A stretch of DNA of 64,000 bases from the IMG/VR virus record IMGVR_UViG_3300042359_000853, positions 1 through 64,000 of that record; one strand, 5' to 3'. The notes below the pieces were generated by a model that was given only the letters and a program-made list of their open reading frames with translations, was not told the DNA's origin and made no database searches. Positions 27,194 to 63,079 of the stretch are shown in pieces (the first letter of the stretch is position 1; every line of letters starts with the position of its first letter). The translations under genes were made by a program, and so were the position numbers.

Positions 27194-27487
27194 ATGAACT
27201 ACAGATCAAAGATCAAAAACTTCACTCAGTTCGTTAAAGAGGCAATATCTGGAACTTATGATATATCACCACTTGGACCGAATATGCCAAGACAAGAGTT
27301 GAAACTTCCAGCAGGAACTCTCAAAGATGAAATAGTTTGGCTAGATGGATATGATAAATTTTATACTAGAGATGATTTTGAAGAAATCTATAACGAGTAT
27401 TTGAAAGCTGGTGGAAGTCCTCTTTTTGAATTCACAAAACAAAATTTGCAAATTATTCTTCAGTTTTTAGAAGAAAAAAATAGTTAA
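27194..27487 (+). CDS. Hypothetical protein with N-terminal KIKNFTQFVKE peptide
   Basis: 97 aa ORF. Confidence 0.7.
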   Translation: MNYRSKIKNFTQFVKEAISGTYDISPLGPNMPRQELKLPAGTLKDEIVWLDGYDKFYTRDDFEEIYNEYLKAGGSPLFEFTKQNLQIILQFLEEKNS

Positions 27488-28041
27488 ATGCCTCGTAGCC
27501 ATTTATCTGAAAACCCTTTATTTCCAGTGCAGTATCGAGCATATTCATTTACGGTTGGAGTTCCAGTATTATAAAAACCAAGTGCTAAAGACCAAGTTCC
27601 AAACTCATCGTGTAAATATTTAAGATATTTAAGCGATATATTCACGTTCATATCTATATTTGTTAGAAGCTCTTTACGAGAAATTCTTCTTCTTTCAACA
27701 AAATTTGCAGTTTTTGGCATTACTTGCATTGGACCAACTGCTCCTTGACCAGAAACTTGTCTAGGTGAGTAGGCAAAATGTAGAGGGCCTCGGTATCCAG
27801 TTTCTAAATAAGCTACATTGAAAGCGATATGTTCAGGTATTTCGTATTTTTGAGCGTATTTTCTAATGGATTCATACATATGAATTGAGGCAATCATAGA
27901 AGTTTCTGAATATTCTCGATCCTCTTGAGATACAACCTCTTTAGCTGAAAAAAGTTTCCAAGAAAGAAAAAAAGTTAATAATATTGAACAAACGTAGAAT
28001 AATATTAGTTTATTTCCTAGTTTTATAAATTGATTACTCAT
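27484..28041 (-). CDS. Lytic transglycosylase (SLT domain) with N-terminal TM
   Basis: VAYLETGY (catalytic E), GAVGPMQVMP, NIDMN, ALGFYNTG. Confidence 0.85.
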   Translation of the reverse strand: MSNQFIKLGNKLILFYVCSILLTFFLSWKLFSAKEVVSQEDREYSETSMIASIHMYESIRKYAQKYEIPEHIAFNVAYLETGYRGPLHFAYSPRQVSGQGAVGPMQVMPKTANFVERRRISRKELLTNIDMNVNISLKYLKYLHDEFGTWSLALGFYNTGTPTVNEYARYCTGNKGFSDKWLRGI

Positions 28042-28351
28042 GTCTTACCATATTTTTAGCGTATATATGAAAAATACCATATCCTATTGAGTCCTCATAA
28101 AACTTGATCTCACCGGTTTCTTTATCGATAAGAAGAAGATTATCATACTGATCTATTGCTAGATTTACTCTATCTTTTAGTATTATCGAGTGTTTTGGCT
28201 TGGTTTTTTGGTTGTAAAGAAGATCGAAGTTCATACCGGCTAGAAATCCAGCACCTAGTGAGAAAACGACTAATACATAGTAAAAAAACTTATTTAAGAA
28301 AGTTTTTACTTTTTGAATGTTTATAAAATCAAGATTAAATTTTTTGTTCAT
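28034..28351 (-). CDS. Single-TM membrane protein upstream of SLT
   Basis: FFYYVLVVFSLGAGFLAGM helix. Confidence 0.6.
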   Translation of the reverse strand: MNKKFNLDFINIQKVKTFLNKFFYYVLVVFSLGAGFLAGMNFDLLYNQKTKPKHSIILKDRVNLAIDQYDNLLLIDKETGEIKFYEDSIGYGIFHIYAKNMVRHE

Positions 28352-29274
28352 AATTTATTTTGTTTAAGAAATTCGAGTGCTATTTGAGATTCGTTTTGAT
28401 TTTTGAATCCATGATAGAATAATACTTCACTTGAGTTTCGACAATACGTATATCCATCTTCTTCAAGGTAGGTATCTAAAATATTCGGATCCATTTCAAC
28501 TTTTTTAAGTATTTCACTTTTATGAGTATTTACAAAAATTGTTTCATAATTTTTTTCAACACTTCTTCTCCAAAGAATGATATTTATTGCTGTTTCCTCG
28601 TGAAAAGGTAGATATTCTTTACCTCTTCTTCGTATCCAGGGATTTTCTATGAGTGATTTCCATTCTAAAATAAAATCTTCACACTTTTCACCAAAACTAA
28701 TTACACAGGTTCCAACATATCTCATCGATCTTTTTTTAACACCGAAAAGACACATAAGTGCTGCTTCGTTGTAGATAATTGTCCCAGGTGTTCCGGTAAC
28801 CCTACCATCAATATCGACTTCAACAGCTAGTCTTTCTTGACCATCAGATCCAATGTATTTCAATGTAGGATTCCATATTTTAGCTTTGGAGTAATGTGGT
28901 CCAAAAATTATTGGAAAAGAATGGGATATTGTCGTGAGGAGAGGATAGTCCTCATCATTTTCAAAATAGTCGATATTAAATCTTTTACCGACAAGAATAT
29001 CACAATCCATGAACAAAAAATCACCACCAAAATGATTTAATGCGTGAAATAAAATAGCTGGTTTATAAAAATAAAAATCAGTGCCGTATTCTTTTACTGG
29101 TTCAAAATATTGACATATAAGATTTGGATAGTCAAGTTGTGATTCAAATCCAATTGTATAATATATTATAGGTATAGTATAATTGGTTCTTATTATTATA
29201 GACTCAACGAGATTTTTAGCTTGAAATTCATAATTTTTATCGGAAAGAATAATAATTTTTCTTGAATTTTTCAT
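28348..29274 (-). CDS. GT-A-fold glycosyltransferase-like protein
   Basis: YFYKPAIL..FLFMDCDI (DxD)..HEETAIN..LFYHG. Confidence 0.6.
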   Translation of the reverse strand: MKNSRKIIILSDKNYEFQAKNLVESIIIRTNYTIPIIYYTIGFESQLDYPNLICQYFEPVKEYGTDFYFYKPAILFHALNHFGGDFLFMDCDILVGKRFNIDYFENDEDYPLLTTISHSFPIIFGPHYSKAKIWNPTLKYIGSDGQERLAVEVDIDGRVTGTPGTIIYNEAALMCLFGVKKRSMRYVGTCVISFGEKCEDFILEWKSLIENPWIRRRGKEYLPFHEETAINIILWRRSVEKNYETIFVNTHKSEILKKVEMDPNILDTYLEEDGYTYCRNSSEVLFYHGFKNQNESQIALEFLKQNKL

Positions 29275-31589
29275 ATCAATCCATTTTGTTTTAGTTTTTC
29301 AAAAATAAATTCTGGTTCAATTGTTCTAGTACATTCAAACCATTTTGTTGAACCTTTATGTTCCGGACACCAAGTCCAGTCACCTGGATCGAATTTCCAG
29401 TCAGTTGTTTTAGTGAAACAAGAATTACATACTTGTTGGTTTTGTATTCTTATAATGTCTTGTGTAAATTCGTTGTCAGCAGAGGTAACTCCTGATATCA
29501 TAACTACTTCTTTCCCAAGTGCGTGAGCAACCCAAGAAAGACCAGAAGAAACTCCAATAAAAAATGCAGAATGTTGTATAATATTCACTACTTCATCGAA
29601 ACTTAGTCCTGTTTTACGAACCGAGGAATGAGGTAAAGAATTCCACCAACCTTCAATTCCAAAAACTTCGTGAAGATCCACCGCAACTGGTATTAAATCG
29701 ATTTTTCTCAACATTTTTGATAAAATTTCCCATCCGTTGGGATAGTTCCAATATTTACACTGGGAGGTAGATTGAACCCCTAGGCAAACATATTTGTCCC
29801 TAATAGGTCTTGGTAATTTAGATCTTTTGATGAGTGGTCTGAGTTCTTTATATTCAAGTTCAAGTTGATCTGAAAAACCTTTCATGACCGGTCTATCAAA
29901 TTTGTAATCAAGATAAATTATATTAGTAAAGTTTTCATCAAAATGTTCTTTTTTCTCTAATAAATTCAGGTTTGGAAAATCCGAAGGATCGAAAATATCT
30001 ACACCTTTCACGTAAAGATCACACACTATATTTTTCATCAGTGCGAATTCTTGAGCATACCTTACTGAAACTATTTTATCACCAAGAGCATCACTATTAG
30101 AGACAATAATAGTTTTTTGAGAAATTTTTTCTTTTTGATTAAAATAATCTAGAAGTTGTCGTTCGTTCAAGGAGTAATAAAACCCGTTTTCGTCGGCTTG
30201 AGAATCAATTTGAACACCATCAATGTAGTAATTTTTTCTAGTTTTTATGGTAAGATAACATCTAGTTTTTTCAACAAAAGATTTTACAGTATCTGGTTCT
30301 AGATCGAAACTCTCGATAACAAGCAAAATACGCTTATTTTCAAGAGAAAGTTCTTCTTTATGTAAAATTTTGGATCCCTCTTTTACCTCAACAACCCATT
30401 CTATAAATTCTCCATCTCTAAATGCTGAAGACCATATGTTTGTTGATTTTTTCGTAAGACTATGGTATATGACTCTTCCTGTTTTCTTATCACTAAAAAC
30501 AACAGTCCCATCAAAAGAAAAACCTACTTTACAAAAAGCTCTTCTAGATGAAAAATTTATAATGATTCCCTTGGTGTCGGGAGTAGACCTAGATGTCTTT
30601 TTAATTTTGTTGTAATTATATAAAAGTTGATCTCTTTCACTCACTTGGTAGAATTTTTTATAATTTTGGATCATTCTACCAACTACCAAATCCCAAGAAA
30701 AACTTAGACGATTATCAATAATTTGGTTGGTCAAGCTATCGTATTTCTTGAAAGCATTCCCAATCGCCTTCTCTAAAGAATCTATCTCTGGGGAGCAATT
30801 TATTAGTCCAGGTAAAGATTCATTGCAAACCCCAACAACTGGCATACCCACAGATAAAGCTTCTAGAATTGTTAAATTTGGATGACCAGCTTCTAAATTA
30901 GAAGGATGCAAAAATAACTGGTAATTTTTCATTCTATCAATAGATTCTTTGTAATCTAAATCATATAGAATAGTTAAATTTTTGTAATCTGGTTTCCAGA
31001 AATCAAAGAAAGTTTGATTACTGGATGGGCACATGATATGAATTTCGAAGCCGAACTTTTTAGCACATTCGATACCTAACAAAAAACCCTTTCTATCTAT
31101 GGTTCTGTCGCCACCCATACCATTATTTGCCATCATCAATAATTTTGGGTTATCTATACGAACTTTCTCGGATCTATCAATTAAGGGATAGTCTTCTAAA
31201 TTTACACCGTGTGGGAGATATACTATTTGTTCGAGTTCGTCGAAATATTTTATCAAATGTTTTGAGTGCACAAATGTAAGCTTCGAATTTTTAATAGCCC
31301 TGTAATTTTCTTTATAAACCGCTGAATCTTTTCCGAAATACTCTACGTGATGATCATGTAGGGAAAAAACATAAGGGATCCCCTTTTGATATAAAATATT
31401 TGCCAAATTGGCCATGTGAACATGTATAATTTGACCATGCCTATATTGTATATCATCAAGATAAAGAATTTCTACCTCATACCCGAGTTTCTCTAGTGAG
31501 AGTTTATATTCCCAGATTATTTTTTCAACCGCACCCCATCCATTTGGTGGTATGGGTATATTACCAGGTGTTACTTGAATTATCTTCAT
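29271..31589 (-). CDS. GT4 glycosyltransferase fused to autotransporter-heptosyltransferase-like (TibC/Aah-type) domain
   Basis: N-term GWGAVEKIIW..EAGHPNLTILEALSVG (GT4); C-term SDALGD, QSTSQCKYWN..GW, GVSSGLSW, CNSC..WCP..FEC. Confidence 0.75.
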   Translation of the reverse strand: MKIIQVTPGNIPIPPNGWGAVEKIIWEYKLSLEKLGYEVEILYLDDIQYRHGQIIHVHMANLANILYQKGIPYVFSLHDHHVEYFGKDSAVYKENYRAIKNSKLTFVHSKHLIKYFDELEQIVYLPHGVNLEDYPLIDRSEKVRIDNPKLLMMANNGMGGDRTIDRKGFLLGIECAKKFGFEIHIMCPSSNQTFFDFWKPDYKNLTILYDLDYKESIDRMKNYQLFLHPSNLEAGHPNLTILEALSVGMPVVGVCNESLPGLINCSPEIDSLEKAIGNAFKKYDSLTNQIIDNRLSFSWDLVVGRMIQNYKKFYQVSERDQLLYNYNKIKKTSRSTPDTKGIIINFSSRRAFCKVGFSFDGTVVFSDKKTGRVIYHSLTKKSTNIWSSAFRDGEFIEWVVEVKEGSKILHKEELSLENKRILLVIESFDLEPDTVKSFVEKTRCYLTIKTRKNYYIDGVQIDSQADENGFYYSLNERQLLDYFNQKEKISQKTIIVSNSDALGDKIVSVRYAQEFALMKNIVCDLYVKGVDIFDPSDFPNLNLLEKKEHFDENFTNIIYLDYKFDRPVMKGFSDQLELEYKELRPLIKRSKLPRPIRDKYVCLGVQSTSQCKYWNYPNGWEILSKMLRKIDLIPVAVDLHEVFGIEGWWNSLPHSSVRKTGLSFDEVVNIIQHSAFFIGVSSGLSWVAHALGKEVVMISGVTSADNEFTQDIIRIQNQQVCNSCFTKTTDWKFDPGDWTWCPEHKGSTKWFECTRTIEPEFIFEKLKQNGLI

Positions 31590-31597: not shown

Positions 31598-34500
31598 TTA
31601 TTTATTCGGAATCTGAACAGTATCTCGTAAATCTTTGGATTTTCCGCTAAAAACTACTCTGTTTTGATATACAACTTCCCACGACAATAGAGAACCATCT
31701 ACTATATTCCAGGACCAAGAGGATTCATAATTTGCTAATTCTTGTTCTAAAATTTCTTCTCGACCATCATCATATACTAATATAAATTTTATTCCAATAT
31801 TATTGTTCGTAAGATTTCTAGAGAAGAACATAAAGTTATCTGAATTTTCAACTCTGTAAACACCCGTGAAGAAATCCTTGAAATTATTAGAAAAATTAGA
31901 GATAGAGGCCTCTGTATTCCAAATAGTATCTGTTAAAATACTATCCATAATTCTACCATTATGTATTTTCAATTCTTTCGGGTTTGTTTTTTCAAGAAGT
32001 CTTCTAAATAACACTTCTACAGTTACAAAATCTCTACTATGCCACTTTTTTTGTATAAAATCTAAGTAATCACTCTCTTTACTAAATTTTGGTATTGTAT
32101 CTAAAAAATAATCAATATTCCAGAACTGAAGATGAAAAGATATGTTATTTTCTTCAGTTTCTGTGGATTCATCGTAGTCGTTAAAAAATAACACCGCTTT
32201 TTGGTCATTACTCTCCATTTCAAGTGCGATATCATAGATTTTATCTAGTGAACGATTACCATATAGATCGTCACATTCAATTCTCACCACATTTGTGTAT
32301 CCGAGTGATTTTGCTAAGCTCATTGCGTTATGAAAATTTACCATTACAGATAAACCGTGTTTTTGAACACCTTTTGTAAAATTTTTCAGAGTGAAAATCC
32401 ATTTACTTTCAAGAGAGACATAATCATTTATAATTATTTCTTTAACATTTGAATATTCTTCACGAAATAATTGATTTCTACGATCATAGTAAAAAAAATC
32501 AACCATTTGTTGTATTTCTCTATCAATTGTTGTATTAGATACTAACATCAAATCAAATCCTCTAATTTTGAACCTTTCGATCTGCTGAATTAGTCTTTCT
32601 TTCACTCTTCTACTTGATACATAACTATCTAAAATTACTAGAGTTTTTTCTAGACCTTTTATTTGGATATCAGTTTTTGTTAATTCTTTATCCCCATGAA
32701 TATTTTTTGATATGAAAACCACACCTTTTTCCTGTGAAGTGCCGTTTATCAGAGTTTTACAATCTTCTTCAAAAATTTGATACTGGTATCCAAGCTTAAT
32801 GATTCTCAAAATTATTTGATTTCTAAGTATATCTTCAAAGTTATCGTGGAACTCTAATATAATATTCTCTATCTTGAGTAAATTCTGATCAGAAAGACCC
32901 TCGAAGGCTTTATATTCACTACCTTCGATGTCCATTTTCATGAGAGAGACTTTCTCAATACCAGAATCAGCAAAAAAGCTATCTAAGTCTATTGATGAAA
33001 TTTCGAAATGTTTATCGGTGATATTGATGGCAGAGCTAATAATTGAATTGTTTTGATCTTCATAGATTTTTATCTTTTCTTTTTTATCCCAAACAGCGTT
33101 TTTTACAAGACTAACTCGTGAATCCTCACCGTGTAAATTATTAAATACCTTGACTGCTTTATCAGAAACCTCAAAAGCTATTACTTTTTTTGCTCCTTTA
33201 TCTTTTGCTAATTCCGTGAATAGTCCAATAGAACTACCAACATCTAAAATCAGATCAAGTGAGTTTATACTAGAAAGAAATTGATCATAAATTCTATCTG
33301 TAAAAAATTGTTCGAAATTTACAAAAATAGGTTCATAAGTATCGATTCTAAACTTTTTTTTCTGAACATTAATCATCTTTATCTGATATGATTGAGAATA
33401 TAGTAAATTTCCACCATGATCGTAGAAATCAATAAGAAATCCTGAGAAATTTGGATTTTCTGAAAAATCATAATAGGATTTTGGTAGTGGTATTGCCCAA
33501 TAATTATTTTTATTTTCGAATTTTGCATCAAATGAAAAAATAGGAATTTGAGTATCCATATCTCTAATACAAACCATCATATCGAAAGGAAGGTCATGTA
33601 AATAATTTAGAGTCAATTTATTATCTGAACTATCAAAGTCAATATCAAATAATTTTTGGTTGAAAAATTCTGGTTTGATTAGTGTGTAGTTGTTTAATAA
33701 GTCTAGCATAGAGTATAATATTTTTGAATTTTCTTCTAAATCTTGGACCATCCATTTCAATTTCGAAGATTCTGTGTAGGTGTTCATATAGACGGGTATA
33801 TTTCTGAGAAAAAGTGGTATTTCCCAAGCGATGGCTTCTTTTATAGCAAGTGGGTTCGTTTCAGTATCACCATATCTACCTTCTGATGGGAAAATTACGG
33901 CATCCATACAAGAGTAAAAAGTATGAACATCGCTTCTTTCCCTCCAAATTTGACAATTTGGTGGTTTATTATCAATCAAATCTTGCCAATGACCCCTATA
34001 ATTATCAGGAAGAGCTCCAACAAAATGAAACTGAACATCAGGCATTATTTTTGCTAGGGAGAAGGTAAATCGTTGATTTTTTCTATTAGAGAAAAGTCCT
34101 ACTTGAAGAACATGCCTTTTTGTAGGATCGAGTCCTAATGTTTTCATACCTAATTCCCTATTTCTCTCACCGGTCGTAATTTCATGCTCGATAATTTCGA
34201 TGGGAATCCCAAGAGGTAGGAAATTTTTGACTTGCCACAGACTCACAACAAGCATCTTATCTGGTAGATACTTTTTCTCACGATGATCGATCGACGAGTC
34301 ATGAAGTGTTTCAAATATTTTCCAAGTTCTTGATGGTGAATATATTTTATCTAGTAATGGATGTGGCAGAAAATGGTCTGAAGTTTCTTCGAAATGAACC
34401 ACATCAGGTGAAATTTTCTGTAATAAGGTAAAAAGTTTTTTATAATTTTGATCGAGTGAAACCAATCTCGAACCAATCATCCCCTCTATTTTTTCTCGAA

Positions 34501-34636
34501 TCGTCGTATATTGTTTTTCATATACTAATTCGAAAACCCATACTTCGTTGTCTGTGTGTAATAGTTCTACTTTTTTTCTTAAATACTCTGGCATTCCACC
34601 AGTAGAAAGATGTGGTGTAATATAAACTATTTTCAT
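31598..34636 (-). CDS. Multidomain GT4 glycosyltransferase + FkbM methyltransferase + C-terminal domain
   Basis: HLSTGGMPEY, ETNPLAIKEA (GT4); LDVGSSIG..AFEV..LMKMDIEGSE (FkbM); start at MKIVY. Confidence 0.8.
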   Translation of the reverse strand: MKIVYITPHLSTGGMPEYLRKKVELLHTDNEVWVFELVYEKQYTTIREKIEGMIGSRLVSLDQNYKKLFTLLQKISPDVVHFEETSDHFLPHPLLDKIYSPSRTWKIFETLHDSSIDHREKKYLPDKMLVVSLWQVKNFLPLGIPIEIIEHEITTGERNRELGMKTLGLDPTKRHVLQVGLFSNRKNQRFTFSLAKIMPDVQFHFVGALPDNYRGHWQDLIDNKPPNCQIWRERSDVHTFYSCMDAVIFPSEGRYGDTETNPLAIKEAIAWEIPLFLRNIPVYMNTYTESSKLKWMVQDLEENSKILYSMLDLLNNYTLIKPEFFNQKLFDIDFDSSDNKLTLNYLHDLPFDMMVCIRDMDTQIPIFSFDAKFENKNNYWAIPLPKSYYDFSENPNFSGFLIDFYDHGGNLLYSQSYQIKMINVQKKKFRIDTYEPIFVNFEQFFTDRIYDQFLSSINSLDLILDVGSSIGLFTELAKDKGAKKVIAFEVSDKAVKVFNNLHGEDSRVSLVKNAVWDKKEKIKIYEDQNNSIISSAINITDKHFEISSIDLDSFFADSGIEKVSLMKMDIEGSEYKAFEGLSDQNLLKIENIILEFHDNFEDILRNQIILRIIKLGYQYQIFEEDCKTLINGTSQEKGVVFISKNIHGDKELTKTDIQIKGLEKTLVILDSYVSSRRVKERLIQQIERFKIRGFDLMLVSNTTIDREIQQMVDFFYYDRRNQLFREEYSNVKEIIINDYVSLESKWIFTLKNFTKGVQKHGLSVMVNFHNAMSLAKSLGYTNVVRIECDDLYGNRSLDKIYDIALEMESNDQKAVLFFNDYDESTETEENNISFHLQFWNIDYFLDTIPKFSKESDYLDFIQKKWHSRDFVTVEVLFRRLLEKTNPKELKIHNGRIMDSILTDTIWNTEASISNFSNNFKDFFTGVYRVENSDNFMFFSRNLTNNNIGIKFILVYDDGREEILEQELANYESSWSWNIVDGSLLSWEVVYQNRVVFSGKSKDLRDTVQIPNK

Positions 34637-34703
34637 GTTATTTTTATATCCCATATCCTGTAATAGTTTTTGTAAACAAATAACAAATTAAATATATACT
34701 ATA

Positions 34704-37140: not shown

Positions 37141-39084
<1,944 letters not shown>

Positions 39085-39085
<1 letters not shown>

Positions 39086-43746: not shown

Positions 43747-44859
43747 TTAAATATAGATAGTATAGAATGATTCTCCTGACATGTGGTTAAATGTAAAAAA
43801 AAGTGACAAACTATAAATGGTCTTCTCAGCCTCTTGTGCATCTAAATTTTTATGCAAAACATATAAATTGATAGAAAAATTAGAATGTTGAGATTTTATT
43901 TTAGTAATAAGATTTGGTAATTCTGTTAGGATATCCTGACTGATATTAATTACTATATCGTTATAAGTTAAATTTGTGTCGTAATCAAAAAATAAATTAT
44001 GAAACCAAAAAAGTTCTTTCAATAACATTCTTTTATATGGTGTCAATTCACTAGATATAAAAAGAATATTATTTCTACTCTTCGACAGATTGGATCCACA
44101 AAGATAAAAACACCTTGTTAAATCATAAATTGGAAAATAATTGGGAAGTAATGAACATTTATTTGGATTTTTTAGATCTGGAAATTTATTTTCGATTCTT
44201 AGTCTTTCTTCTTCATTTTTAACCAATTGTTCATTTGTTATTGTTTGTTTGGACCAACTATCTTGGCTTATGTAATAATCACCAAGTGTTAGTGGTAGAA
44301 GAAACCACTTACCCACGAACTCAATATGTCTAACTACATTAGTATCAATGTAGAAACTATCCATTGAACCATCATCGAATTCAGGTAATATATTTCTAAA
44401 AGCCCTGAAGTCAGGTCTTGTATCGAATGTTGGTGAACTAGAGCAATTACAATTTATATAAAGATATGGGTAAGGTGATAAAAATGTGTTTTCATTGTTT
44501 AATTCTCTTGTGTAACATGAAATCCCAGTCACTTGGGGGTATTTTCCAAAAAAATGCGCGTAAGTTTCCAATAATGATGGATATGCATAATCATCACTAT
44601 CAAAAGTCACACATATGTCACCACTACTACCTCTTTGTGGATTATAAAGACACTCTTTTTTCCTAGATTGTCTGAAGTATTTTACTCTAGGATCTTTTAT
44701 TGATAATTCTATCAATTTATCCTCTGCACTATCAAATTCTGAAAAATCATCAGTCACTATCCATTCCCAATTTTTGTAAGTTTGATCTAATATTTGCTCA
44801 TATATTTTTTCAACTCTATGACCACGGTTATAGAATTGTGTATTAATAGAAAACTTCAT
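43747..44859 (-). CDS. GT2-family glycosyltransferase
   Basis: FSINTQFYN..NWEWIVTDDFS..FDSDD. Confidence 0.8.
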   Translation of the reverse strand: MKFSINTQFYNRGHRVEKIYEQILDQTYKNWEWIVTDDFSEFDSAEDKLIELSIKDPRVKYFRQSRKKECLYNPQRGSSGDICVTFDSDDYAYPSLLETYAHFFGKYPQVTGISCYTRELNNENTFLSPYPYLYINCNCSSSPTFDTRPDFRAFRNILPEFDDGSMDSFYIDTNVVRHIEFVGKWFLLPLTLGDYYISQDSWSKQTITNEQLVKNEEERLRIENKFPDLKNPNKCSLLPNYFPIYDLTRCFYLCGSNLSKSRNNILFISSELTPYKRMLLKELFWFHNLFFDYDTNLTYNDIVINISQDILTELPNLITKIKSQHSNFSINLYVLHKNLDAQEAEKTIYSLSLFFTFNHMSGESFYTIYI

Positions 44860-56158: not shown

Positions 56159-56974
56159 ATGAAAAAAAAGGGTGTTTTTTGTATTTGGGGAGGAAGTTTC
56201 AGAAATTCATATAATAGCTATGAAAGTTTCACTAAAAATAATATTCTTGAAAAGCAATTTGTGGCATCACAATCTCAGATCAATTTTCTAAAATCACTTT
56301 TATCGGAAATTGATATATGTCTAATCATAATCACCTACAAAAATGAGTTTTCTGATTTTTTATTTAGCTGGTACAAAGATTTTAATCCACTAATAATCTT
56401 GATTGAAAAACCCATAGGATTTATTAAATTATCGAAAAAAGTTCCTCAATTAGTATCAAGATACGGTAGTGACTTTTATTTTTTTATAAGAATAGATTTG
56501 GTTTTGAAATCCAAATTGTTAGACATAATTCATTTTCCGGAGAAAAAAATCGTTTGTCCATTTATATGTTATATAGGGGGACATGAGCACATAGTTTCAC
56601 CATTTCCTTCACATCTACCCCAGTATAAAAAAAATATTATTCCTAGTGAAAAAACACGTTCAAGACCGAGTGACTTGATCATGTATGTTTGTTCTAAATT
56701 CAAAAGTGAACTAGCAAGCTCAAAAATATGGCTCAATCATGATTTTACTCTGCACATAAACTATGATATCTATAAACAAATTGATTATTACATCGACACC
56801 TTTCACGACAGCAATACATCAGGAGATAGAAATCCACTTTTCTACATTTGTAACAGAGATGAAGAATTGATGTGGAAATCAGAATTTTTTTGCCATACAG
56901 GTGATGGCCAACCAGAAATGAATTATGAAAAAAATTTCAACAAAATCTTCGTAAAAGATTACCCACTAATCTAG
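56159..56974 (+). CDS. Glycosyltransferase-like hypothetical protein
   Basis: FFIRIDL..RPSDLIMYV..DTFHDSN; borders glycosylation island. Confidence 0.45.
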   Translation: MKKKGVFCIWGGSFRNSYNSYESFTKNNILEKQFVASQSQINFLKSLLSEIDICLIIITYKNEFSDFLFSWYKDFNPLIILIEKPIGFIKLSKKVPQLVSRYGSDFYFFIRIDLVLKSKLLDIIHFPEKKIVCPFICYIGGHEHIVSPFPSHLPQYKKNIIPSEKTRSRPSDLIMYVCSKFKSELASSKIWLNHDFTLHINYDIYKQIDYYIDTFHDSNTSGDRNPLFYICNRDEELMWKSEFFCHTGDGQPEMNYEKNFNKIFVKDYPLI

Positions 56975-58545
56975 ATTATATTACAAAAATACTCACTCCA
57001 ATATTGATAAGTAAGTAGATCATCTGGTGTTCCCCAGCAAATATAATTTTTGGATTCAAAAACTTTTACACAAAGACCATTTTCAATATTTCTGTTAAGA
57101 ACATCATCGACATAATATTCTCCATTAGTTGTTATTCGAGAATCCATATTCTGATATAATCCCTCCAGAAAATATTTAGCTTTTCTAAAATACATAGTTC
57201 CGATGATTGCGTGTGTTGTTAGTGGATTTTCATAAATGAATTTTTTACAGGATACATATTGAATATTTCCATCATCATCCACATCTAACCAAGCATACAT
57301 ATCTGGATTATTTACACTTGTTGCGTTACCTCTAAAAGACCAAACGATAATATCGACATTCGGGTCCTCAACAAGTCTTTGATATTCTTGACTGTCATAC
57401 ACAACACCATTATCACAAGCAGAGATGAGAATTGGTTTTTCAGGATCGATATCGAATTCATCTAAACCAATTTTACAAGTTATTGCTTGACCCTGTGTGA
57501 TATAATCAATTACCGAAAATTGAGACTCTGGGTAATTCTGTGATATTATTTGATCTATTTCAAAATATTCTAGATGTTCTTTCTGACAGATAAATATTTT
57601 GTTGGATGTTCTAGGTAAGCACTCAACTGCGGATACAATCATTGGTTTTCCATCAACCGGTATCAAAGGCTTTGGTATATCATATCCGATTTTTGAAAAT
57701 CTAGAACCCCTCCCGGCCATAGGTAGAATAAGTGTAGTATCATCCGTATGTGTATAGTGTTGTGTGTATTTTTTGAGATTTTTGAAATAATTAGACCAAC
57801 CAAGATATATTTCCAAATCGTAGGGTGTTCCCCATTGAAGCATTTTTTCAATCGGATATACACCAACTCTGAGATTGTCTTCTATTAGTAAATTATAAAC
57901 TAAACTAACATAATATTCACCACCTAGATGAATATCTCTCTCAATAAGTTTTTCGAAATACTTCTTTAGGGTCTTTCCCGATCTAAAATAGTATGTGCCA
58001 TTAGAAGCCCATTCATTCATTTTGTTATCTGTGAAAGGTTCTTTTTCTTTTATCTTTTCAACAAGACCGGTTTCCAAATTTTCTTTACAAAAAGCGTAGT
58101 TATCACTACCAAGCATATGTGGGTGAAATCCAGTATAACAAGCTATAGAACCATCAAGGTTTCTTCTTTTACAATCTTCTAAGAAAGCGTAAAAATCCCA
58201 TCGAGTTCCATAATCACAATAGCTTACAATAATCTCTTTGTTATCATCGATATGATCTTTAATTTGGAAAACAGCATCGACTGGTCCCTTTCTATACAAA
58301 TCTTCAACCGAAAATATTTGTGCGGAGGGTCTAATTTTCAATAAAATTTCTCTCATGTTAGTTTGTTCCAAATGTTCTTTTCTACAAATGAAAGTGATAT
58401 CTTCAACTCCCGGAAACAAATCAACTACAAATTTAATAATTGGGTATCCATCAACTTCAATCAAAGGTTTTGGAGATGTATAACCTGCTGAAGAGAATCT
58501 CTTACCAAGTCCAGACATTGGTATTATTAATTTAATATTTTCCAT
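56971..58545 (-). CDS. Tandem double sugar-phosphate nucleotidyltransferase
   Basis: Two domains: IIPMSGLGKRF..PKPLI..WGTPYDL and ILPMAGRGSRF..PKPLI..WGTPDDL. Confidence 0.85.
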   Translation of the reverse strand: MENIKLIIPMSGLGKRFSSAGYTSPKPLIEVDGYPIIKFVVDLFPGVEDITFICRKEHLEQTNMREILLKIRPSAQIFSVEDLYRKGPVDAVFQIKDHIDDNKEIIVSYCDYGTRWDFYAFLEDCKRRNLDGSIACYTGFHPHMLGSDNYAFCKENLETGLVEKIKEKEPFTDNKMNEWASNGTYYFRSGKTLKKYFEKLIERDIHLGGEYYVSLVYNLLIEDNLRVGVYPIEKMLQWGTPYDLEIYLGWSNYFKNLKKYTQHYTHTDDTTLILPMAGRGSRFSKIGYDIPKPLIPVDGKPMIVSAVECLPRTSNKIFICQKEHLEYFEIDQIISQNYPESQFSVIDYITQGQAITCKIGLDEFDIDPEKPILISACDNGVVYDSQEYQRLVEDPNVDIIVWSFRGNATSVNNPDMYAWLDVDDDGNIQYVSCKKFIYENPLTTHAIIGTMYFRKAKYFLEGLYQNMDSRITTNGEYYVDDVLNRNIENGLCVKVFESKNYICWGTPDDLLTYQYWSEYFCNII

Positions 58546-58548
58546 AAA

Positions 58549-59466
58549 TTAGATTTGTGTGAATAATTTGAAATTTTTGAATTTTGGATATTGCATTTCC
58601 ACTAAAGGACAATCTTCATAAAGGTATATGAGATTTCCGCTTCCTATTAAAGAGCAAAATATAGAAAAATTAGAGTGCATCTGAGAAAGAATTATAGTTC
58701 TAGCGCTAGAGAGAAGAAACATATCAACATAAGTGTTGATAAAACCATAATTTTCGTCACTTTTTTTAATTAAATAGTTCTTGTATTTATTTTGAAAAAA
58801 GAGTTTCTCGTCACTATCGTCAGAAGAGAAATAAATCTTAGTTTCAGGCCCATTCTTTTTAATATACGCGTCTATAGCTTCTATTGTTGTTAAGTTGAGC
58901 GATTCTAGATTGTCTGTTGCAAAAATATCCGGGTTCACTACAACCTTATCAGTTCTTCGTAAATGTATTACAAGATCCGGTTTTTCAATCGTATTTGTAA
59001 TTTTTGAAAGATTTTCTGTAGGTCTGAATTCTTTGAGAACTTGATTATATTTTTCTATAAATATTTCTAGGTTACAGATATTTTGTGCATATTTTTTCCA
59101 AAAAGTTACTGCCGAATATATACCACCGAGATAGTCACTAAAAATATAGTCAAAATTCAAACTATGAACTCCACTTTGTTGAGTAAAAATTTCTATATCA
59201 GTAGGTAAGTAAAAATATTCTATGAAGTTTTCGTAAAGATAATCGTGATATCTATTGTCGTGATACTTTTTTATAATGATTTCATTTCCCGGTTGATTTG
59301 AGTGTAATCTGGTGACATATGTACCATTTCCATAATAATCAAAAATTTCCCATTTCAGGAATAGTTTTGCACCTAAGAGTCTCGAAAAAGTTGCCATCAA
59401 CGAAATATCCGTTAGTCTATCACACAAACCGGATCCAGGTGAATTAGACCAAAATATATTATTCAT
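58549..59466 (-). CDS. Fucosyltransferase-like (GT11/GT23/NodZ-type) protein
   Basis: GLCDRL, IHLRRTDK, IYFSSD, DMFLLSSA..SNFS. Confidence 0.6.
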   Translation of the reverse strand: MNNIFWSNSPGSGLCDRLTDISLMATFSRLLGAKLFLKWEIFDYYGNGTYVTRLHSNQPGNEIIIKKYHDNRYHDYLYENFIEYFYLPTDIEIFTQQSGVHSLNFDYIFSDYLGGIYSAVTFWKKYAQNICNLEIFIEKYNQVLKEFRPTENLSKITNTIEKPDLVIHLRRTDKVVVNPDIFATDNLESLNLTTIEAIDAYIKKNGPETKIYFSSDDSDEKLFFQNKYKNYLIKKSDENYGFINTYVDMFLLSSARTIILSQMHSNFSIFCSLIGSGNLIYLYEDCPLVEMQYPKFKNFKLFTQI

Positions 59467-60289
59467 AAATATTATACCAATTTTCAGGAGTGGGGTTTTT
59501 ATAGATATTATAATCCCTAGAATTTCTAGTATATAAATGTAAATATTTCGGTATATTCTTTATTTTCTCAGAATAAAACGATAAAAAATATATTAAAACA
59601 GAATAACTCGAGTCTATGAAATGAAGTTCACTAGCATTTTCTATAATTCCGATTTGGTCTAGAAATATTTTTGATTTGCTATCCAGATTATAAATATTCT
59701 CTGTTTTTATATATATCCGATCGATGATGATGTGTCTTTTGTGATCCTCATGAATTACAGAATACTCACTTCCATTAAGTTCGGTGTAGTTTTGAAATAT
59801 TTGTTCTTCCCTTAACTTATTTCTATTTATGGCAAATTTGTTAATTCTATTTTCTATATCAATTTTATTATAGGTGTAAAAAGAGTGTGAAAATGAGATG
59901 TTTTCTTCGTTTTTTCTAAAGTTTTCCCAGGAATTGTATTCATGAAAAGCTCCTACTTTTATAATCTCGTCATGTTGATATTTTGACCAGTTGACATAAC
60001 TACAATACTCATAACCTCTAGGACATTTTCCCATTTGATTTGATGTATGACACTTTAAACATGTTTCATCCAAATTTTTTTCAATAGAAATCTCAGGAAG
60101 TTCGCAGGAAACTTGAGGAAGATGGGAATACATATAATCTAAAATTTCTTTCTTATCGTGTGTGTCAACTAAAATTTTTATATTTTCTCTTGTTTCAGAG
60201 TAATAGTTCACTAAACCATTACAGGAAAACAGATCAGCATATCCTAGATGATGAAGTAAAATTGTATTATTCATCCTATTTATCTTCAT
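59459..60289 (-). CDS. Glycosyltransferase-like hypothetical protein
   Basis: HHLGYAD..IHED..ASELHFIDSS; within glycosylation island. Confidence 0.5.
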   Translation of the reverse strand: MKINRMNNTILLHHLGYADLFSCNGLVNYYSETRENIKILVDTHDKKEILDYMYSHLPQVSCELPEISIEKNLDETCLKCHTSNQMGKCPRGYEYCSYVNWSKYQHDEIIKVGAFHEYNSWENFRKNEENISFSHSFYTYNKIDIENRINKFAINRNKLREEQIFQNYTELNGSEYSVIHEDHKRHIIIDRIYIKTENIYNLDSKSKIFLDQIGIIENASELHFIDSSYSVLIYFLSFYSEKIKNIPKYLHLYTRNSRDYNIYKNPTPENWYNIYE

Positions 60290-60783
60290 TCTATTTTTGA
60301 ATTGTTTAATTTTGAAATATCAGCCACATAATCACTACAAATTCCAAAAACATTCGGATTGTAATATTTTCCTATCAATTCTAAATCAAGCAGTGGAATT
60401 ATACAACTCCTATCTAAATAATCATCGAATTTATCTAATGGGTTGTAGTGAACCCAGATATGACCAGAACTAACAAGTGTAAAATCATCTTCATTATGAC
60501 AGAAATATTTAAGCCCTGGTACATCTCTCGATAATATAAAAAGTTTTTGAGCTGATTCTAAATCTTTACAATGAATCCATAGAAAATCTTTTTTCTCAAA
60601 AATCCAACTCAAATCAACAAGGTAGTCAGGTCCATCATGACCAAGATAAAGTTTGCCATCGTGTGTCCTAAAATCTATCTCAACATCATATCCTTTAGAG
60701 ATCGCATTATCTATAAAAGACGGTTGATTTTCTCTTTCTGGTTCTCTGCCGGAAATATTCCCGCGATGTGATATGAGTTTCAT
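60286..60783 (-). CDS. GDPD/PLC-like phosphodiesterase-fold protein
   Basis: ISHRGN, GYDVEIDF, LYLGHD, WIHCK. Confidence 0.65.
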   Translation of the reverse strand: MKLISHRGNISGREPERENQPSFIDNAISKGYDVEIDFRTHDGKLYLGHDGPDYLVDLSWIFEKKDFLWIHCKDLESAQKLFILSRDVPGLKYFCHNEDDFTLVSSGHIWVHYNPLDKFDDYLDRSCIIPLLDLELIGKYYNPNVFGICSDYVADISKLNNSKIE

Positions 60784-60856
60784 ATATATTTGTATATTGT
60801 TTTAATCTTTTTGAATGGAGAAATTCTGCAAACTTGACGAATCTATTTTTTTTAAT

Positions 60857-60955
60857 TTAGTCTGATCGAATTTTCCCCTGTTGATGCTTTGCAAAATATC
60901 CGTGATAAAAATCTTCGTGAAGATTTATATCGTCCTCGTCTCTATGATCATACAT
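60857..60955 (-). CDS. Possible 32-aa micro-ORF
   Basis: MYDHRDEDDINLHEDFYHGYFAKHQQGKIRSD; overlaps the stop of the upstream gene. Confidence 0.3.
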   Translation of the reverse strand: MYDHRDEDDINLHEDFYHGYFAKHQQGKIRSD

Positions 60956-61502
60956 ACCATACTTTATTTTTTTTTATGCAATAAGTTGGGCATCCATCTT
61001 CAGAAATATAGTTGATAGTCAGTTTTTTTTCTAAACAAAATTCATCAACAGCTCTTACCACACCTTCGAATCTTGGAGCAACATAGTCATGACCACATAT
61101 ATGTCCTCCTATTTTTACTTTATTAAAAGACAATTCTAAATCCTCTCTAACACTTTTATAATCGTGATCCGCATCTATGTATATCAAATCCAACTTGTTA
61201 TCTTCAATCGAATTCAAAAAGTCTCGGCTTGTATTCTTTATGATGTATGTGTTTTTGTGATTTTCAAAATAAGACTTCAGAGATATCATTTCTTGTTCTA
61301 ACCAAGTGTATGTCATATTGTTTCCATCTTTATCTCCGGATCCGACATAACCCTCGAATAAATCGACCAAAAAAAGTTCTTTTGGTTCCAGATATTCGGA
61401 GATAAATTTCGAAAAATCTCCTTTGAATACTCCTATTTCGGCTACCGATAGACCTTTACCTAATGAGATGAGAAGATCTTCTCTTGTTTTGAATGTCTTC
61501 AT
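60948..61502 (-). CDS. Class I SAM methyltransferase
   Basis: AEIGVFKG, LVDLF, LIYIDADHDY..GGHICGHDY. Confidence 0.85.
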   Translation of the reverse strand: MKTFKTREDLLISLGKGLSVAEIGVFKGDFSKFISEYLEPKELFLVDLFEGYVGSGDKDGNNMTYTWLEQEMISLKSYFENHKNTYIIKNTSRDFLNSIEDNKLDLIYIDADHDYKSVREDLELSFNKVKIGGHICGHDYVAPRFEGVVRAVDEFCLEKKLTINYISEDGCPTYCIKKNKVWYV

Positions 61503-62128
61503 AAATTGAAAAATTCTTTAAATTTTTTAAAGTGGAACTTAGTAAGATCTACACGATGTTGATTTGAACTAATTTTGTAGGTGTAATGGATGTTTAATAC
61601 ATTCTCAGAAAATATCTCATCACCATAATACATAGAGTTTAACACCGAATCTACTACATTGATTTCCAAACTGTTATCATATATTTCATCATTAACATAG
61701 TATTGTTCATATGAAGGATATATAGCCGTAGAACCATATTTATAATAGATATTCTCAAAAAAAGATTCATATTTTTTTGGTATTCCTATCAATCCACAAT
61801 TGTACTTAAACTTACTATTGAAAGTAAAGTTTTCCTCGGTGAAACCTCTATCATAAGTCATATTTAAAAATTCTTTATTGAACATTTTTTCAAGATTGTA
61901 CAATTTAGTTGGAACTAAATCCAAATCCCAACATAGTATAAAGTCATCATTGACTAATCTATGACAAAACAACTTCAACCAAGACGGATGTAATCCGTAT
62001 ATGTTTTGAGAAATATTTTGTTCAAGAATAAATAAATTAATGTTGTTAAAATCACACAACTTTTCAATAAGAGGTAAAGTATATTTATCATATACTGTAT
62101 TTCCGACATTTATTAAAAAAATAGTCAT
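61499..62128 (-). CDS. GT-A-fold glycosyltransferase
   Basis: PSWLKL..WDLD..YNCGLI..EQYYVN..IHY. Confidence 0.6.
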   Translation of the reverse strand: MTIFLINVGNTVYDKYTLPLIEKLCDFNNINLFILEQNISQNIYGLHPSWLKLFCHRLVNDDFILCWDLDLVPTKLYNLEKMFNKEFLNMTYDRGFTEENFTFNSKFKYNCGLIGIPKKYESFFENIYYKYGSTAIYPSYEQYYVNDEIYDNSLEINVVDSVLNSMYYGDEIFSENVLNIHYTYKISSNQHRVDLTKFHFKKFKEFFNL

Positions 62129-62141
62129 ATTCTTGTTTTTT

Positions 62142-62447: not shown

Positions 62448-62450
62448 ATT

Positions 62451-63065: not shown

Positions 63066-63079
63066 AATTTTATCTAATT

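What the first reader, a model, noticed from the sequence alone, without database searches (positions are those of the whole stretch)
29271..30110. Autotransporter-heptosyltransferase-like domain fused to GT4 in a phage: candidate protein heptosylation system
Seen: DALGD, QSTSQCKYWN..GW, GVSSGLSW and four Cys (CNSC, WCP, FEC). Known: TibC/Aah-type enzymes use ADP-heptose to O-heptosylate Ser residues on beta-helix adhesins and bind iron through four Cys. Inference: the phage hyper-glycosylates its own fibres or capsid, or surface cargo such as the beta-helix-like T9SS protein or the Ser/Thr-rich LamG protein, with GT4 and FkbM partners extending and methylating the glycan.
Basis: partly seen in the sequence, partly recalled or inferred. 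Interest (0 to 1): 0.65.

Follow-up and report, generated by a model that had tools for sequence, protein, structure and literature searches.

The report
Phage TibC-like heptosyltransferase fused to GT4
A huge phage, probably infecting Bacteroidota, encodes a two-enzyme fusion whose second half is a clear relative of the bacterial enzymes that put heptose sugars on adhesin proteins; it belongs to a widespread, undescribed viral branch of that family, and what it glycosylates is still unknown.

Summary
Window 29271-31589 (-) is one 772-aa ORF: a retaining-type GT4 domain (residues 1-314), a linker, an eight-strand barrel (341-425), then a TibC/Aah-type (BAHT) catalytic domain (432-772). TIGR04414 matches at E 4e-56 (190.7 bits, cutoff 200). 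TibC is the best solved structure by sequence (E 1e-32) and by fold (E 2e-20). The catalytic Asp, Thr/Lys/Trp donor contacts and all four metal-binding Cys are kept; adenine-contacting Arg286 is Val. The gene is translationally coupled to a GT-FkbM protein and a newly recognised GT-A (DxD) enzyme. The same contig encodes HldD-like and HldE-kinase-like genes, and the closest relative's genome adds GmhA-like and adenylyltransferase-like genes, so a heptose donor is plausible but not shown. At least 569 viral contigs carry relatives, forming branches outside the bacterial autotransporter-linked clade. No autotransporter, AIDA repeat, Pfam beta-helix or conserved non-enzyme neighbour was found, so the acceptor is unknown. 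Rivals are host envelope glycans and phage DNA. Verdict: a real new viral variant of a known enzyme kind; the system-level claim is only partly supported.

The parts
29271..31589 (-). 772-aa ORF (P0001): GT4 - linker - beta-barrel - BAHT (TibC/Aah-like) glycosyltransferase fusion, with no TM segment.
30648..31589 (-). Residues 1-314: retaining-type GT4 (GT-B) domain with an E233...E243 motif invariant among full-length relatives.
   Evidence: VIA-align Z 28, rmsd 2.3 A over 290 residues to alpha-1,2-glucosyltransferase tll1591; also SPS, BshA, MshA, SdgB. Weak Pfam GT4 match. Invariant columns in A2.
30315..30569 (-). Residues 341-425: eight beta-strands, counterpart of TibC's N-terminal flattened barrel (two four-stranded sheets).
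   Evidence: DSSP of the model. Foldseek aligns 447-460 columns to TibC chains of 380-389 residues. TibC barrel description in PMC4358343. Pfam PF21129 itself did not match.
29274..30296 (-). Residues 432-772: BAHT catalytic domain. Contains catalytic D504 (codon 30078-30080), donor contacts T608, K612 and W686, AAH-like S681, and V667 in place of TibC R286.
   Evidence: Residue roles from PMC4358343.
29331..29429 (-). Four-Cys metal finger (C721, C724, C741, C753), equivalent to TibC C339/342/358/370.
   Evidence: Aligned. Invariant in 88 viral and 120 metagenomic relatives.
29622..29678 (-). Thumb-length insertion (residues 638-656). The TibC tip pair F265/V266 aligns to G647/W648, and the model is low-confidence here.
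31598..34654 (-). Upstream 1018-aa protein: GT1/GT4-like domain (about 78-316), FkbM methyltransferase (about 466-624), and an unassigned C-terminal 378 residues. Its stop lies 8 nt before the P0001 start.
   Evidence: Syntenic GT-FkbM gene upstream of the fusion in L013, L010 and L011.
28348..29274 (-). 308-aa soluble GT-A glycosyltransferase with a DxD motif (D90, D92), GT6/GT8-like fold. Its start overlaps the P0001 stop (ATGA).
   Evidence: No Pfam, NCBIfam or PHROG match. Model pLDDT 82. Foldseek BoGT6a, alpha-3-GalT, ABO GTA/GTB, WbbM, E about 1e-7. Invariant D90/D92. The domain is fused to GT, FkbM and BAHT domains in other viral loci.
28034..28351 (-). 105-aa protein with one TM-like segment, overlapping both neighbours by 4-8 nt.
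27484..28041 (-). 185-aa SLT-domain lytic transglycosylase with an N-terminal hydrophobic segment; last gene of the coupled block.
   Evidence: Pfam SLT E 4e-16. Hydropathy.
43747..44859 (-). GT2 glycosyltransferase (370 aa), part of the phage's wider glycan repertoire.
56971..64000 (-). Start of a second glycan island: a double sugar-phosphate nucleotidyltransferase (56971-58545), a TylF-like MT (60948-61502), an FkbM MT (62451-63065) and a class II aldolase (63080-63754). Beyond the window it continues to about 72.5 kb with a PRK-family kinase, GT61, two GT2-like genes and a GT10 fucosyltransferase.

Best explanation
The ORF encodes a soluble, cytoplasmic, bifunctional glycosyltransferase of a huge phage. 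Its C-terminal two-thirds is a catalytically intact member of the TibC/Aah (BAHT) superfamily. This part most likely transfers a heptose from ADP-heptose to a hydroxyl of a protein acceptor made in the infected cell. As in AAH, the Ser at the stereoselectivity site would tolerate both the L,D and D,D forms. The fused retaining GT4 domain, the GT-FkbM protein and the GT-A enzyme would then extend and O-methylate that sugar into a short heteroglycan.

Shown here: the homology, the fold, conservation of the catalytic and metal-site residues, the operon coupling, the recurrent fusion and synteny with GT and FkbM domains, and the presence of HldD-like and HldE-kinase-like genes in the same genome.

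Inferred: the donor identity, a protein as acceptor, and the order of steps.

The identity of the acceptor is open. Phage virion proteins are my leading guess, by analogy with mycobacteriophage virion glycosylation.
For: - Family: TIGR04414 E 3.7e-56, covering profile positions 51-372 of 374. TibC is the best solved relative by sequence and by fold.
- Active site: D504, T608, K612, W686 and the four Cys are kept, and they are 99-100% conserved in 208 relatives. S681 matches the AAH state.
- Localisation: no TM segment in any of the three enzymes.
- Coupling: gene junctions of 4-8 nt.
- Recurrence: the GT-FkbM plus GT4-BAHT pair is syntenic in the three closest viral relatives. GT, FkbM and GT-A domains are fused with BAHT in many viral loci.
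- Donor supply in the same contig: an SDR whose best family is HldD (164 bits, next best 44) with GxxGxxG and YxxxK, and a pfkB kinase whose best family is the HldE kinase domain (124 bits, next best 42) with GAGD.
- Donor supply in relatives: the 99%-complete genome of the closest full-length relative (G004) has GmhA-like (186 bits), HldE-kinase (314 bits) and adenylyltransferase-like (56 bits) genes. A canonical GT9 is the most recurrent neighbour in viral loci.
- Precedent: BAHTs O-heptosylate Ser in the cytoplasm (PMC4358343). Virion protein glycosylation is known in mycobacteriophages (Freeman 2023, as cited in PMC12619734).
Against: - The score is below the TIGR04414 equivalog cutoff (190.7 against 200).
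- Arg286, which contacts adenine N1 in TibC and whose Ala mutant abolished or largely diminished activity, is Val here. It is Arg in only about a third of the viral relatives.
- GmhA, GmhB and the adenylyltransferase were not found in the 227-kb fragment.
- Both heptose-pathway-like genes are shorter than the models and below their cutoffs.
- No autotransporter, AIDA repeat or Pfam beta-helix occurs in the contig.
- No conserved non-enzyme neighbour occurs in the 80 viral loci.
- The gene's neighbourhood is DNA-metabolism and lysis-like, not structural.
- Most viral relatives lack the barrel, and some lack the thumb, so TibC-style dodecamer-on-beta-helix recognition may not apply.
Confidence: 0.45

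Rival explanations
1. The module remodels host envelope glycoconjugates (LPS core or O-antigen-like chains, capsule, or the glycolipid anchor of T9SS cargo) rather than proteins. The purpose could be superinfection exclusion or receptor masking. The BAHT-like domain would act like its GT9 cousins on a sugar acceptor.
For: - BAHTs are GT9 relatives (weak Pfam GT9, TIGR02193 and TIGR02201 matches).
- The most recurrent neighbour in viral loci is a canonical GT9.
- The contig carries a large second island with GT10 fucosyltransferase, GT61, GT2, nucleotidyltransferases and sugar methyltransferases, typical of polysaccharide synthesis.
- The operon is coupled to a small membrane protein and a membrane-anchored SLT.
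- A weak Atlas lead points to WavE/GT25 for the upstream protein's C-terminus.
Against: - The BAHT-specific barrel and the universally conserved Cys4 finger serve oligomerisation and protein-substrate recognition in TibC.
- No flippase, polymerase, ligase or lipid-carrier GT was noticed among the ORFs scanned, though this was not searched exhaustively.
- All three enzymes lack membrane segments.
Confidence: 0.2
2. The module hypermodifies phage DNA by glycosylating hydroxymethylated or hydroxylated pyrimidines, protecting the genome from host nucleases.
For: - Phage GT clusters that place mono- to trisaccharides, including heptose, on 5hmC are documented (bioRxiv 10.1101/2023.12.21.572611; PMC13326640).
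- In P0016's phage (G003), the BAHT gene lies in an island with a C5 DNA methylase and a divergent thymidylate-synthase-family gene.
- ThyA-family genes lie a few kb from the BAHT gene in G001, G002 and G004.
- The window's neighbours include DNA-metabolism genes.
Against: - No thymidylate-synthase-family gene occurs in the 227-kb contig.
- No TET/JBP was found, but that search's controls were silent, so it carries no weight.
- The described DNA GTs are T4-beta-GT-like or GT-A, not BAHT-like.
- High-scoring ThyA genes are common in large phages, so proximity is weak evidence.
- FkbM-type sugar methylation and four or more GT domains suggest a larger glycan than those reported on DNA.
Confidence: 0.12
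3. One reading: the acceptors are the phage-encoded T9SS-tagged protein (5740-7314) and/or the S/T-rich LamG protein (8303-9310), heptosylated in the cytoplasm before export.
For: - Both ORFs exist. The first has a signal-peptide-like N-terminus and a near-threshold Por_Secre_tail match (25.7 bits against 27); the second is S/T-rich with a LamG domain.
- BAHT substrates in bacteria are likewise modified before Sec export (PMC4358343).
Against: - They lie more than 20 kb away on the opposite strand, with no co-occurrence evidence.
- No beta-helix or AIDA-type repeats were detected in the contig.
- The contig holds many other, larger S/T-rich proteins at 77-135 kb and 193-225 kb.
Confidence: 0.06
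4. The BAHT-like domain uses a different activated sugar (for example a GDP- or other NDP-heptose or hexose made by the phage's own nucleotidyltransferases), so the product is not ADP-heptose-derived.
For: - Arg286, which TibC's authors give as the basis of ADP specificity, is Val here and variable in the viral clade.
- The window encodes a 524-aa protein with two sugar-phosphate nucleotidyltransferase domains, and the same architecture lies in P0016's island.
- No HldE-type adenylyltransferase occurs in the fragment.
Against: - Heptose-contacting W305 and beta-phosphate-contacting T226 and K230 are conserved.
- HldD-like and HldE-kinase-like genes are specific to the ADP-heptose route.
- Relatives carry HldE-domain-II-like genes.
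Confidence: 0.15

Closest known systems
TibC / AAH (Aah): bacterial autotransporter heptosyltransferases (BAHT family, TIGR04414; PDB 4RAP, 4RB4)
   Same: - GT-B catalytic domain preceded by an eight-strand barrel.
- LGD catalytic Asp.
- Thr, Lys and Trp donor contacts.
- AAH-like Ser at the stereoselectivity site.
- Thumb-length insertion.
- Four-Cys finger.
- Soluble, cytoplasmic protein.
- Best match by profile, by sequence and by fold.
   Different: - Fused to an N-terminal GT4 domain.
- Score just under the equivalog cutoff.
- Arg286 is Val.
- The thumb tip is not Phe-Val.
- Pfam's TibC barrel model does not match.
- It lies outside the exclusive clade of barrel-bearing bacterial BAHTs (support 1.0).
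- No adjacent autotransporter or AIDA-type substrate.
- Encoded by a phage.
LPS heptosyltransferases WaaC/WaaF/WaaQ (GT9, PF01075)
   Same: GT-B fold, ADP-heptose-type C-lobe motif, weak profile matches over residues 662-706.
   Different: GT9 enzymes lack the barrel and the Cys4 finger, and they act on Kdo or heptose of lipid A-core. Scores here are marginal (17-21 bits) compared with 191 bits for BAHT.
Mycobacteriophage virion glycosylation (Freeman et al. 2023, cited in PMC12619734)
   Same: Phage-encoded glycosyltransferases that decorate the phage's own proteins in the cytoplasm; this is the functional analogy I favour.
   Different: The link is by analogy only: the present acceptor is unknown and no sequence comparison with those enzymes was made here.
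Phage DNA glycan hypermodification clusters (Pyle et al.; bioRxiv 10.1101/2023.12.21.572611)
   Same: Multi-enzyme phage clusters with GTs and sugar-nucleotide enzymes; heptose can be the sugar installed.
   Different: Those systems need a 5hmC-generating methyltransferase plus dioxygenase, or a hydroxymethylase, and they use T4-beta-GT-like or GT-A enzymes. Neither was found in this contig.

Membership tests
BAHT (TibC/Aah) equivalog, TIGR04414 | Whole-protein score at or above the curated cutoff (200 bits). | tested here: not met
   190.7 bits, E 3.7e-56, profile positions 51-372 of 374; 186.5 bits in the six-frame search.
BAHT superfamily | Catalytic base Asp110 (LGD motif). | tested here: met
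   D504; Asp in all 88 viral domains and in all 111 metagenomic domains that cover the column.
BAHT superfamily | Donor contacts Thr226, Lys230 and Trp305. | tested here: met
   T608, K612, W686.
BAHT superfamily | Adenine-contacting Arg286. | tested here: not met
   V667. Arg is kept in the bacterial barrel-bearing BAHTs, but in only 31 of 88 viral and 25 of 120 metagenomic relatives.
BAHT superfamily | Four-Cys iron finger (Cys339, 342, 358, 370). | tested here: met
   C721, C724, C741, C753, invariant in 208 relatives. The identity of the metal is not testable here.
BAHT superfamily | N-terminal flattened beta-barrel of two four-stranded sheets. | tested here: inconclusive
   Eight strands at 341-425 in the model, and Foldseek aligns nearly the whole TibC chain. 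However, Pfam PF21129 gave no match and no aligned ranges were obtained.
BAHT superfamily | Beta-hairpin thumb with a hydrophobic tip (Phe265-Val266) and dodecamer assembly. | tested here: inconclusive
   An insertion of equal length is present, but the tip aligns to G647-W648 and pLDDT is below 50 at 644-649. The oligomeric state was not tested.
BAHT superfamily | Paired with an autotransporter or beta-helix substrate carrying strand-loop-strand Ser motifs. | tested here: not met
   No AIDA (PF16168) or Beta_helix (PF13229) match in the 227-kb contig. No conserved non-enzyme neighbour in 80 viral loci. The contig is only about 39% of the genome.
BAHT superfamily | Transfers heptose from ADP-heptose to Ser. 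| not testable with these tools
   Indirect support only: HldD-like and HldE-kinase-like genes in the contig, and a fuller pathway in G004.
GT4 (retaining GT-B), N-terminal domain | GT-B fold with a C-lobe E...E motif. | tested here: met
   Z 28 to GT4 structures. E233 and E243 are invariant in A2. The Pfam GT4 match is below cutoff (19.8 against 28.5 bits).
GT-A DxD glycosyltransferase (GT6/GT8-like), downstream 308-aa ORF | GT-A fold with a DxD motif. | tested here: met
   Foldseek E about 1e-7 to BoGT6a, alpha-3-GalT, ABO transferases and a GT8. D90-x-D92 is invariant in 17 sequences. No family HMM matches.

The most novel reading that the evidence does not exclude
BAHT-like enzymes form a large viral lineage that has been uncoupled from autotransporters. 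In huge phages they nucleate an autonomous, cytoplasmic protein O-glycosylation pathway. This pathway would be partly self-supplied with ADP-heptose and would coat virion proteins with methylated, heptose-initiated glycans. That would be a heptose-based counterpart of mycobacteriophage and giant-virus virion glycosylation.
Probability: 0.3. Interest if true: 0.75.

Novelty: new variant of a known kind. Interest (0 to 1): 0.55.

Why it matters
BAHTs are known only as partners of bacterial autotransporter adhesins. Here the same catalytic machinery appears in at least 569 viral contigs, usually fused or adjacent to other glycosyltransferases and FkbM methyltransferases. In some genomes it is accompanied by ADP-heptose biosynthesis genes, but it has no autotransporter partner.

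If these enzymes glycosylate virion or other proteins, that would extend phage-encoded protein glycosylation well beyond mycobacteriophages. It would also give a sequence marker for finding glycosylated phages, which matters for host recognition, immune recognition of therapeutic phages and particle stability. If instead they act on DNA or on host envelope glycans, a protein-glycosylating scaffold has been repurposed, which is also of interest.

From my own knowledge, not tested here: phage-encoded ADP-heptose synthesis could matter in gut settings, because ADP-heptose is an innate-immune agonist.

A cultured carrier exists, Microcystis phage Mel-JY01, where the gene is annotated only as an FkbM methyltransferase, so the question can be tested directly.

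Tried and rejected
- **Alternative genetic code:** considered because a TAG lay inside the six-frame kinase match. Rejected: table 11 gives 92% coverage by ORFs of at least 100 aa with all three stops in use, and the kinase ORF simply starts after that stop.
- **Missing pathway genes:** GmhA, GmhB, SIS_2, CTP_transf_like and Histidinol-ppas searches of the contig found nothing. The rfaE_dom_II match in the contig is noise. No adenylyltransferase lies beside the short kinase.
- **Tet_JBP search:** no matches anywhere, controls included, so it is uninformative.
- **Downstream 308-aa ORF as substrate:** rejected; it is a GT-A enzyme domain that is fused to the other enzymes elsewhere.
- **Acceptor searches:** AIDA and Beta_helix searches were empty. 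Pfam on ten large S/T-rich proteins gave only LamG, DUF285 and a sub-threshold sheath match.
- **Promoter/terminator scan:** no better than shuffles (47 found, 43.6 expected), so the operon call rests on gene overlaps.
- **VIA second look:** filled by the GT4 domain, so it gave no TibC residue ranges.
- **PurZ / Z-genome idea:** prompted by a PHROG label. Rejected: the protein is an ordinary PurA.
- **Mel-JY01 'cytidylyltransferase like protein':** the record has no HldE-domain-II-like match.
- **Literature:** no paper on BAHT-like enzymes in viruses was found.
- **Not used:** Complex prediction (no binding claim is made), the large representative search (family scans and the word search sufficed), and the reads tools.


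Full report
**1. Observation**

Window 29271-31589 (minus strand) is a single 772-aa ORF, P0001. By residue number (verified) they are SDALGDK (D504), QSTSQCKYWNYPNGW (T608, K612), GVSSGLSW (S681, W686), CNSC (C721, C724), WCP (C741) and FEC (C753).

The match is not chance:
- NCBIfam TIGR04414 (autotransporter strand-loop-strand O-heptosyltransferase): E 3.7e-56, 190.7 bits, profile positions 51-372 of 374, just below the curated cutoff of 200.
- TibC (PDB 4RB4, 4RAP) are the only solved proteins found by sequence, at E 2.4e-32.
- TibC chains are the best fold matches, at E 1.7e-20.

**2. What the protein is**

An AlphaFold2 model built on 11 full-length relatives (mean pLDDT 81) shows four parts:
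- Residues 1-314: a GT-B domain.
- Residues 315-338: a disordered linker.
- Residues 341-425: eight beta-strands.
- Residues 432-772: a second GT-B-like domain.

The first domain superposes on retaining GT4 enzymes: Z 28, rmsd 2.3 A over 290 residues to an alpha-1,2-glucosyltransferase, and it also matches SPS, BshA, MshA and the protein Ser-O-GlcNAc transferase SdgB. It has invariant E233 and E243.

Foldseek aligns 447-460 columns of the model to TibC chains of 380-389 residues, which is almost the whole TibC chain. This fits the eight strands being the counterpart of TibC's N-terminal barrel of two four-stranded sheets (PMC4358343). However, Pfam's TibC barrel model did not match.

**3. Feature-by-feature test against TibC (PMC4358343)**

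| TibC residue | Role | P0001 | Conserved? |
|---|---|---|---|
| Asp110 | catalytic base | D504 | yes |
| Thr226, Lys230 | beta-phosphate contacts | T608, K612 | yes |
| Trp305 | heptose O4 contact | W686 | yes |
| Pro300 (Ser294 in AAH) | stereoselectivity | S681 | AAH state, which tolerates both ADP-L,D- and ADP-D,D-heptose |
| Cys339, 342, 358, 370 | iron finger | C721, C724, C741, C753 | yes |
| Phe368 | hydrophobic cluster | F751 | yes |
| Arg286 | adenine N1 contact | V667 | no |
| Phe265-Val266 | thumb tip | G647-W648 | no, and modelled with low confidence |

Across 88 viral and 120 metagenomic relatives, the Asp, the Trp and the four Cys are 100% conserved and Thr/Lys nearly so. Arg286 is Arg in only about a third of them. 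The protein is therefore a catalytically intact member of the BAHT superfamily. It is not an equivalog of TibC/Aah.

**4. Genome and host**

The window is the first 64 kb of a 227,583-bp IMG/VR viral contig that CheckV rates 39% complete. Table 11 fits it well. The window encodes DnaK, DnaJ, GrpE, IF3, PurA, an RNR small subunit, gp32 and a homing endonuclease. Outside the window there is a ClpB-like ATPase and a sheath-like protein.

The only phage-database relatives of the full fusion are 636-735 kb uncultured phages and a Microcystis phage.

Among about 185,000 species genomes, only three hold a full-length relative. All three are short contigs of Bacteroidota MAGs. Together with a T9SS-tagged ORF in the window, this suggests a Bacteroidota host.

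**5. The module**

P0001 is the second of five tightly coupled genes, with junctions of -8 to +8 nt.
- Upstream gene (31598-34654): a 1018-aa protein with a GT1/GT4-like domain, an FkbM methyltransferase and an unassigned C-terminal 378 residues.
- Downstream gene (28348-29274): a 308-aa ORF with no family match. I show it to be a GT-A glycosyltransferase. The model has pLDDT 82. The best folds are retaining GT6/GT8 enzymes at E about 1e-7. D90-x-D92 is invariant. Whole copies of the domain are fused to GT, FkbM and BAHT domains in other viral proteins, so it is an enzyme of the pathway, not a substrate.
- Last two genes: a small TM protein and an SLT lytic transglycosylase.

None of the three enzymes has a TM segment.

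The contig also carries a GT2 and a second island from 56.9 to 72.5 kb. That island holds a double sugar-phosphate nucleotidyltransferase, TylF-like and FkbM methyltransferases, a class II aldolase, a PRK-family kinase, GT61, two GT2-like genes and a GT10 fucosyltransferase.

**6. Donor supply**

- In this contig: gmhA, gmhB and the adenylyltransferase were not found.
- C1:165665-166471 encodes a 268-aa SDR. Its best family by far is ADP-glyceromanno-heptose 6-epimerase (164 bits; next family 44 bits; cutoff 274.6). It keeps GxxGxxG and YxxxK.
- C1:155937-156665 encodes a 242-aa pfkB kinase. Its best family is the HldE kinase domain (124 bits; next 42; cutoff 345). It keeps GAGD.
- In 27 other BAHT-carrying viral records: the 99%-complete genome of the closest full-length relative (G004, the record of L013) has GmhA-like (186 bits), HldE-kinase (314 bits) and adenylyltransferase-like (56 bits) genes.
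- The same short kinase recurs in G003, G022 and G026. In G003 it abuts an adenylyltransferase-like gene of 87 bits.
- HldD-like SDRs lie next to BAHT genes in four viral loci.
- A canonical GT9 is the most recurrent neighbour, in 16 loci.

All of this links the viral clade to heptose, but only circumstantially. Most complete records lack the pathway, and I had no background rate for phages without BAHT genes.

**7. Distribution and phylogeny**

The word search found 221 relatives, many of them stand-alone forms of about 280 aa without the barrel.

In the 80 loci fetched there are 101 BAHT-like ORFs. About half are fused to GT, FkbM or GT-A domains, in proteins of up to 1736 aa.

In a FastTree of 192 domains, the 13 bacterial-type BAHTs carrying the Pfam barrel form an exclusive clade (support 1.0). 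The window's domain lies outside that clade, in a clade (support 0.98) with the GT4-fused proteins of L013, L010 and L011. Those three share the GT-FkbM / GT4-BAHT gene pair in synteny.

**8. Acceptor**

This is the open point. The contig has no AIDA repeat and no Pfam beta-helix. The 80 viral loci share no conserved non-enzyme neighbour. The window's local neighbours are an exonuclease, UvdE, an antiterminator and the SLT, not virion genes.

The contig holds many larger S/T-rich proteins.

In the cultured Microcystis phage Mel-JY01, the BAHT domain ends a 1226-aa protein annotated only as FkbM methyltransferase. That gene lies next to a 'structural protein' and near the terminase.

**9. Rivals**

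- *Host envelope glycans.* Supported by the GT9 kinship, the large polysaccharide-like island and the coupling to membrane and SLT genes.
- *Phage DNA glycosylation.* This is documented, including with heptose, and some relatives' islands contain a C5 methylase and a divergent thymidylate-synthase-like gene. Against it, this contig has no such gene, and the described DNA GTs are not BAHT-like. The TET search was uninformative because its controls were silent.
- *A different nucleotide sugar.* Possible because Arg286 is lost and the phage has its own nucleotidyltransferases.

**10. Verdict**

The heptose link gains real but indirect support. The 'system' (donor, acceptor, glycan) remains inferred, and the named cargo candidates are unsupported.

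The finding is a new viral variant of a known enzyme kind. It is widespread in viral metagenomes and automatically labelled by pipelines, but I found no paper describing it.

Noticed in passing
window 12051-13928 (+), 37141-37764 (+), 40563-41585 (+); G000:C1:72471-74600 (-): The phage encodes a full DnaK/GrpE/DnaJ chaperone set (Hsp70 807 bits, GrpE, three-domain DnaJ) plus a ClpB-like double AAA+ ATPase just outside the window.
   Followed up: partly
window 35907-36437 (+): Phage-encoded translation initiation factor IF3 (both the N and C domains match).
   Followed up: no
window 37757-39085 (+): An adenylosuccinate synthetase that PHROGs labels with the PurZ-type family. By Pfam (507 bits) and solved structures (363 bits to bacterial PurA) it is an ordinary full-length PurA, so there is no sign of a 2-aminoadenine genome.
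   Followed up: yes
G000:C1:155937-156665 (-); also G003, G022, G026: A short (242-254 aa) HldE-kinase-like pfkB kinase, missing roughly model positions 70-95, recurs in four BAHT-carrying viral records. In G003 it directly abuts an HldE-domain-II-like gene. Similar short kinases occur on contigs of two Bacteroidota MAGs.
   Followed up: partly
G000:C1:165665-166471 (+) and 166468-167409 (-): The HldD-like short SDR (268 aa) is convergent with a second SLT-domain protein, and a calcineurin-like phosphoesterase lies just upstream.
   Followed up: partly
window 56971-64000 (-) and on to G000:C1:72474: A second, larger glycan island: double nucleotidyltransferase, TylF-like and FkbM methyltransferases, class II aldolase, PRK-family kinase, GT61, GT2-like x2 and GT10 fucosyltransferase. 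Several interleaved ORFs have no family.
   Followed up: partly
window 44856-46622 (-): A 588-aa HNH/homing-endonuclease-like ORF (phrog_3339, E 3e-107) lies directly upstream of the GT2 gene.
   Followed up: no
window 5740-7314 (+): A phage ORF with a signal-peptide-like N-terminus and a near-threshold T9SS C-terminal sorting domain (25.7 bits against 27). This suggests a Bacteroidota host and a phage protein exported through the host's T9SS.
   Followed up: partly
window 19001-19921 (-), 22626-23597 (-): A UvdE UV-damage endonuclease (174 bits) and a 5'-3' exonuclease lie in the same minus-strand block as the GT operon.
   Followed up: no
L007 6654-9439 (a 266-kb viral-like contig carrying P0033): A stand-alone BAHT-like gene sits beside a sulfotransferase and an APS kinase, hinting at sulfated glycans in that phage.
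   Followed up: no
L009 1-11191 (a 109-kb contig carrying P0091): A 10-kb island with GT9-FkbM fusions, GT2, a second GT9, FkbM, GT34, GT1, other methyltransferases and an epimerase, followed by a protein of more than 1864 aa.
   Followed up: no
L099 4750-8430 (Microcystis phage Mel-JY01, PP395634.1): The deposited annotation 'methyltransferase FkbM' hides a 1226-aa multi-domain protein whose C-terminus is a BAHT-like domain (31% identity over residues 475-768 of P0001).
   Followed up: partly
G000:C1:77557-135112: A run of very large S/T-rich proteins (up to 1579 aa; one 705-aa protein is 25% Thr), mostly without any Pfam match. One has four LamG domains and one has DUF285 repeats.
   Followed up: partly
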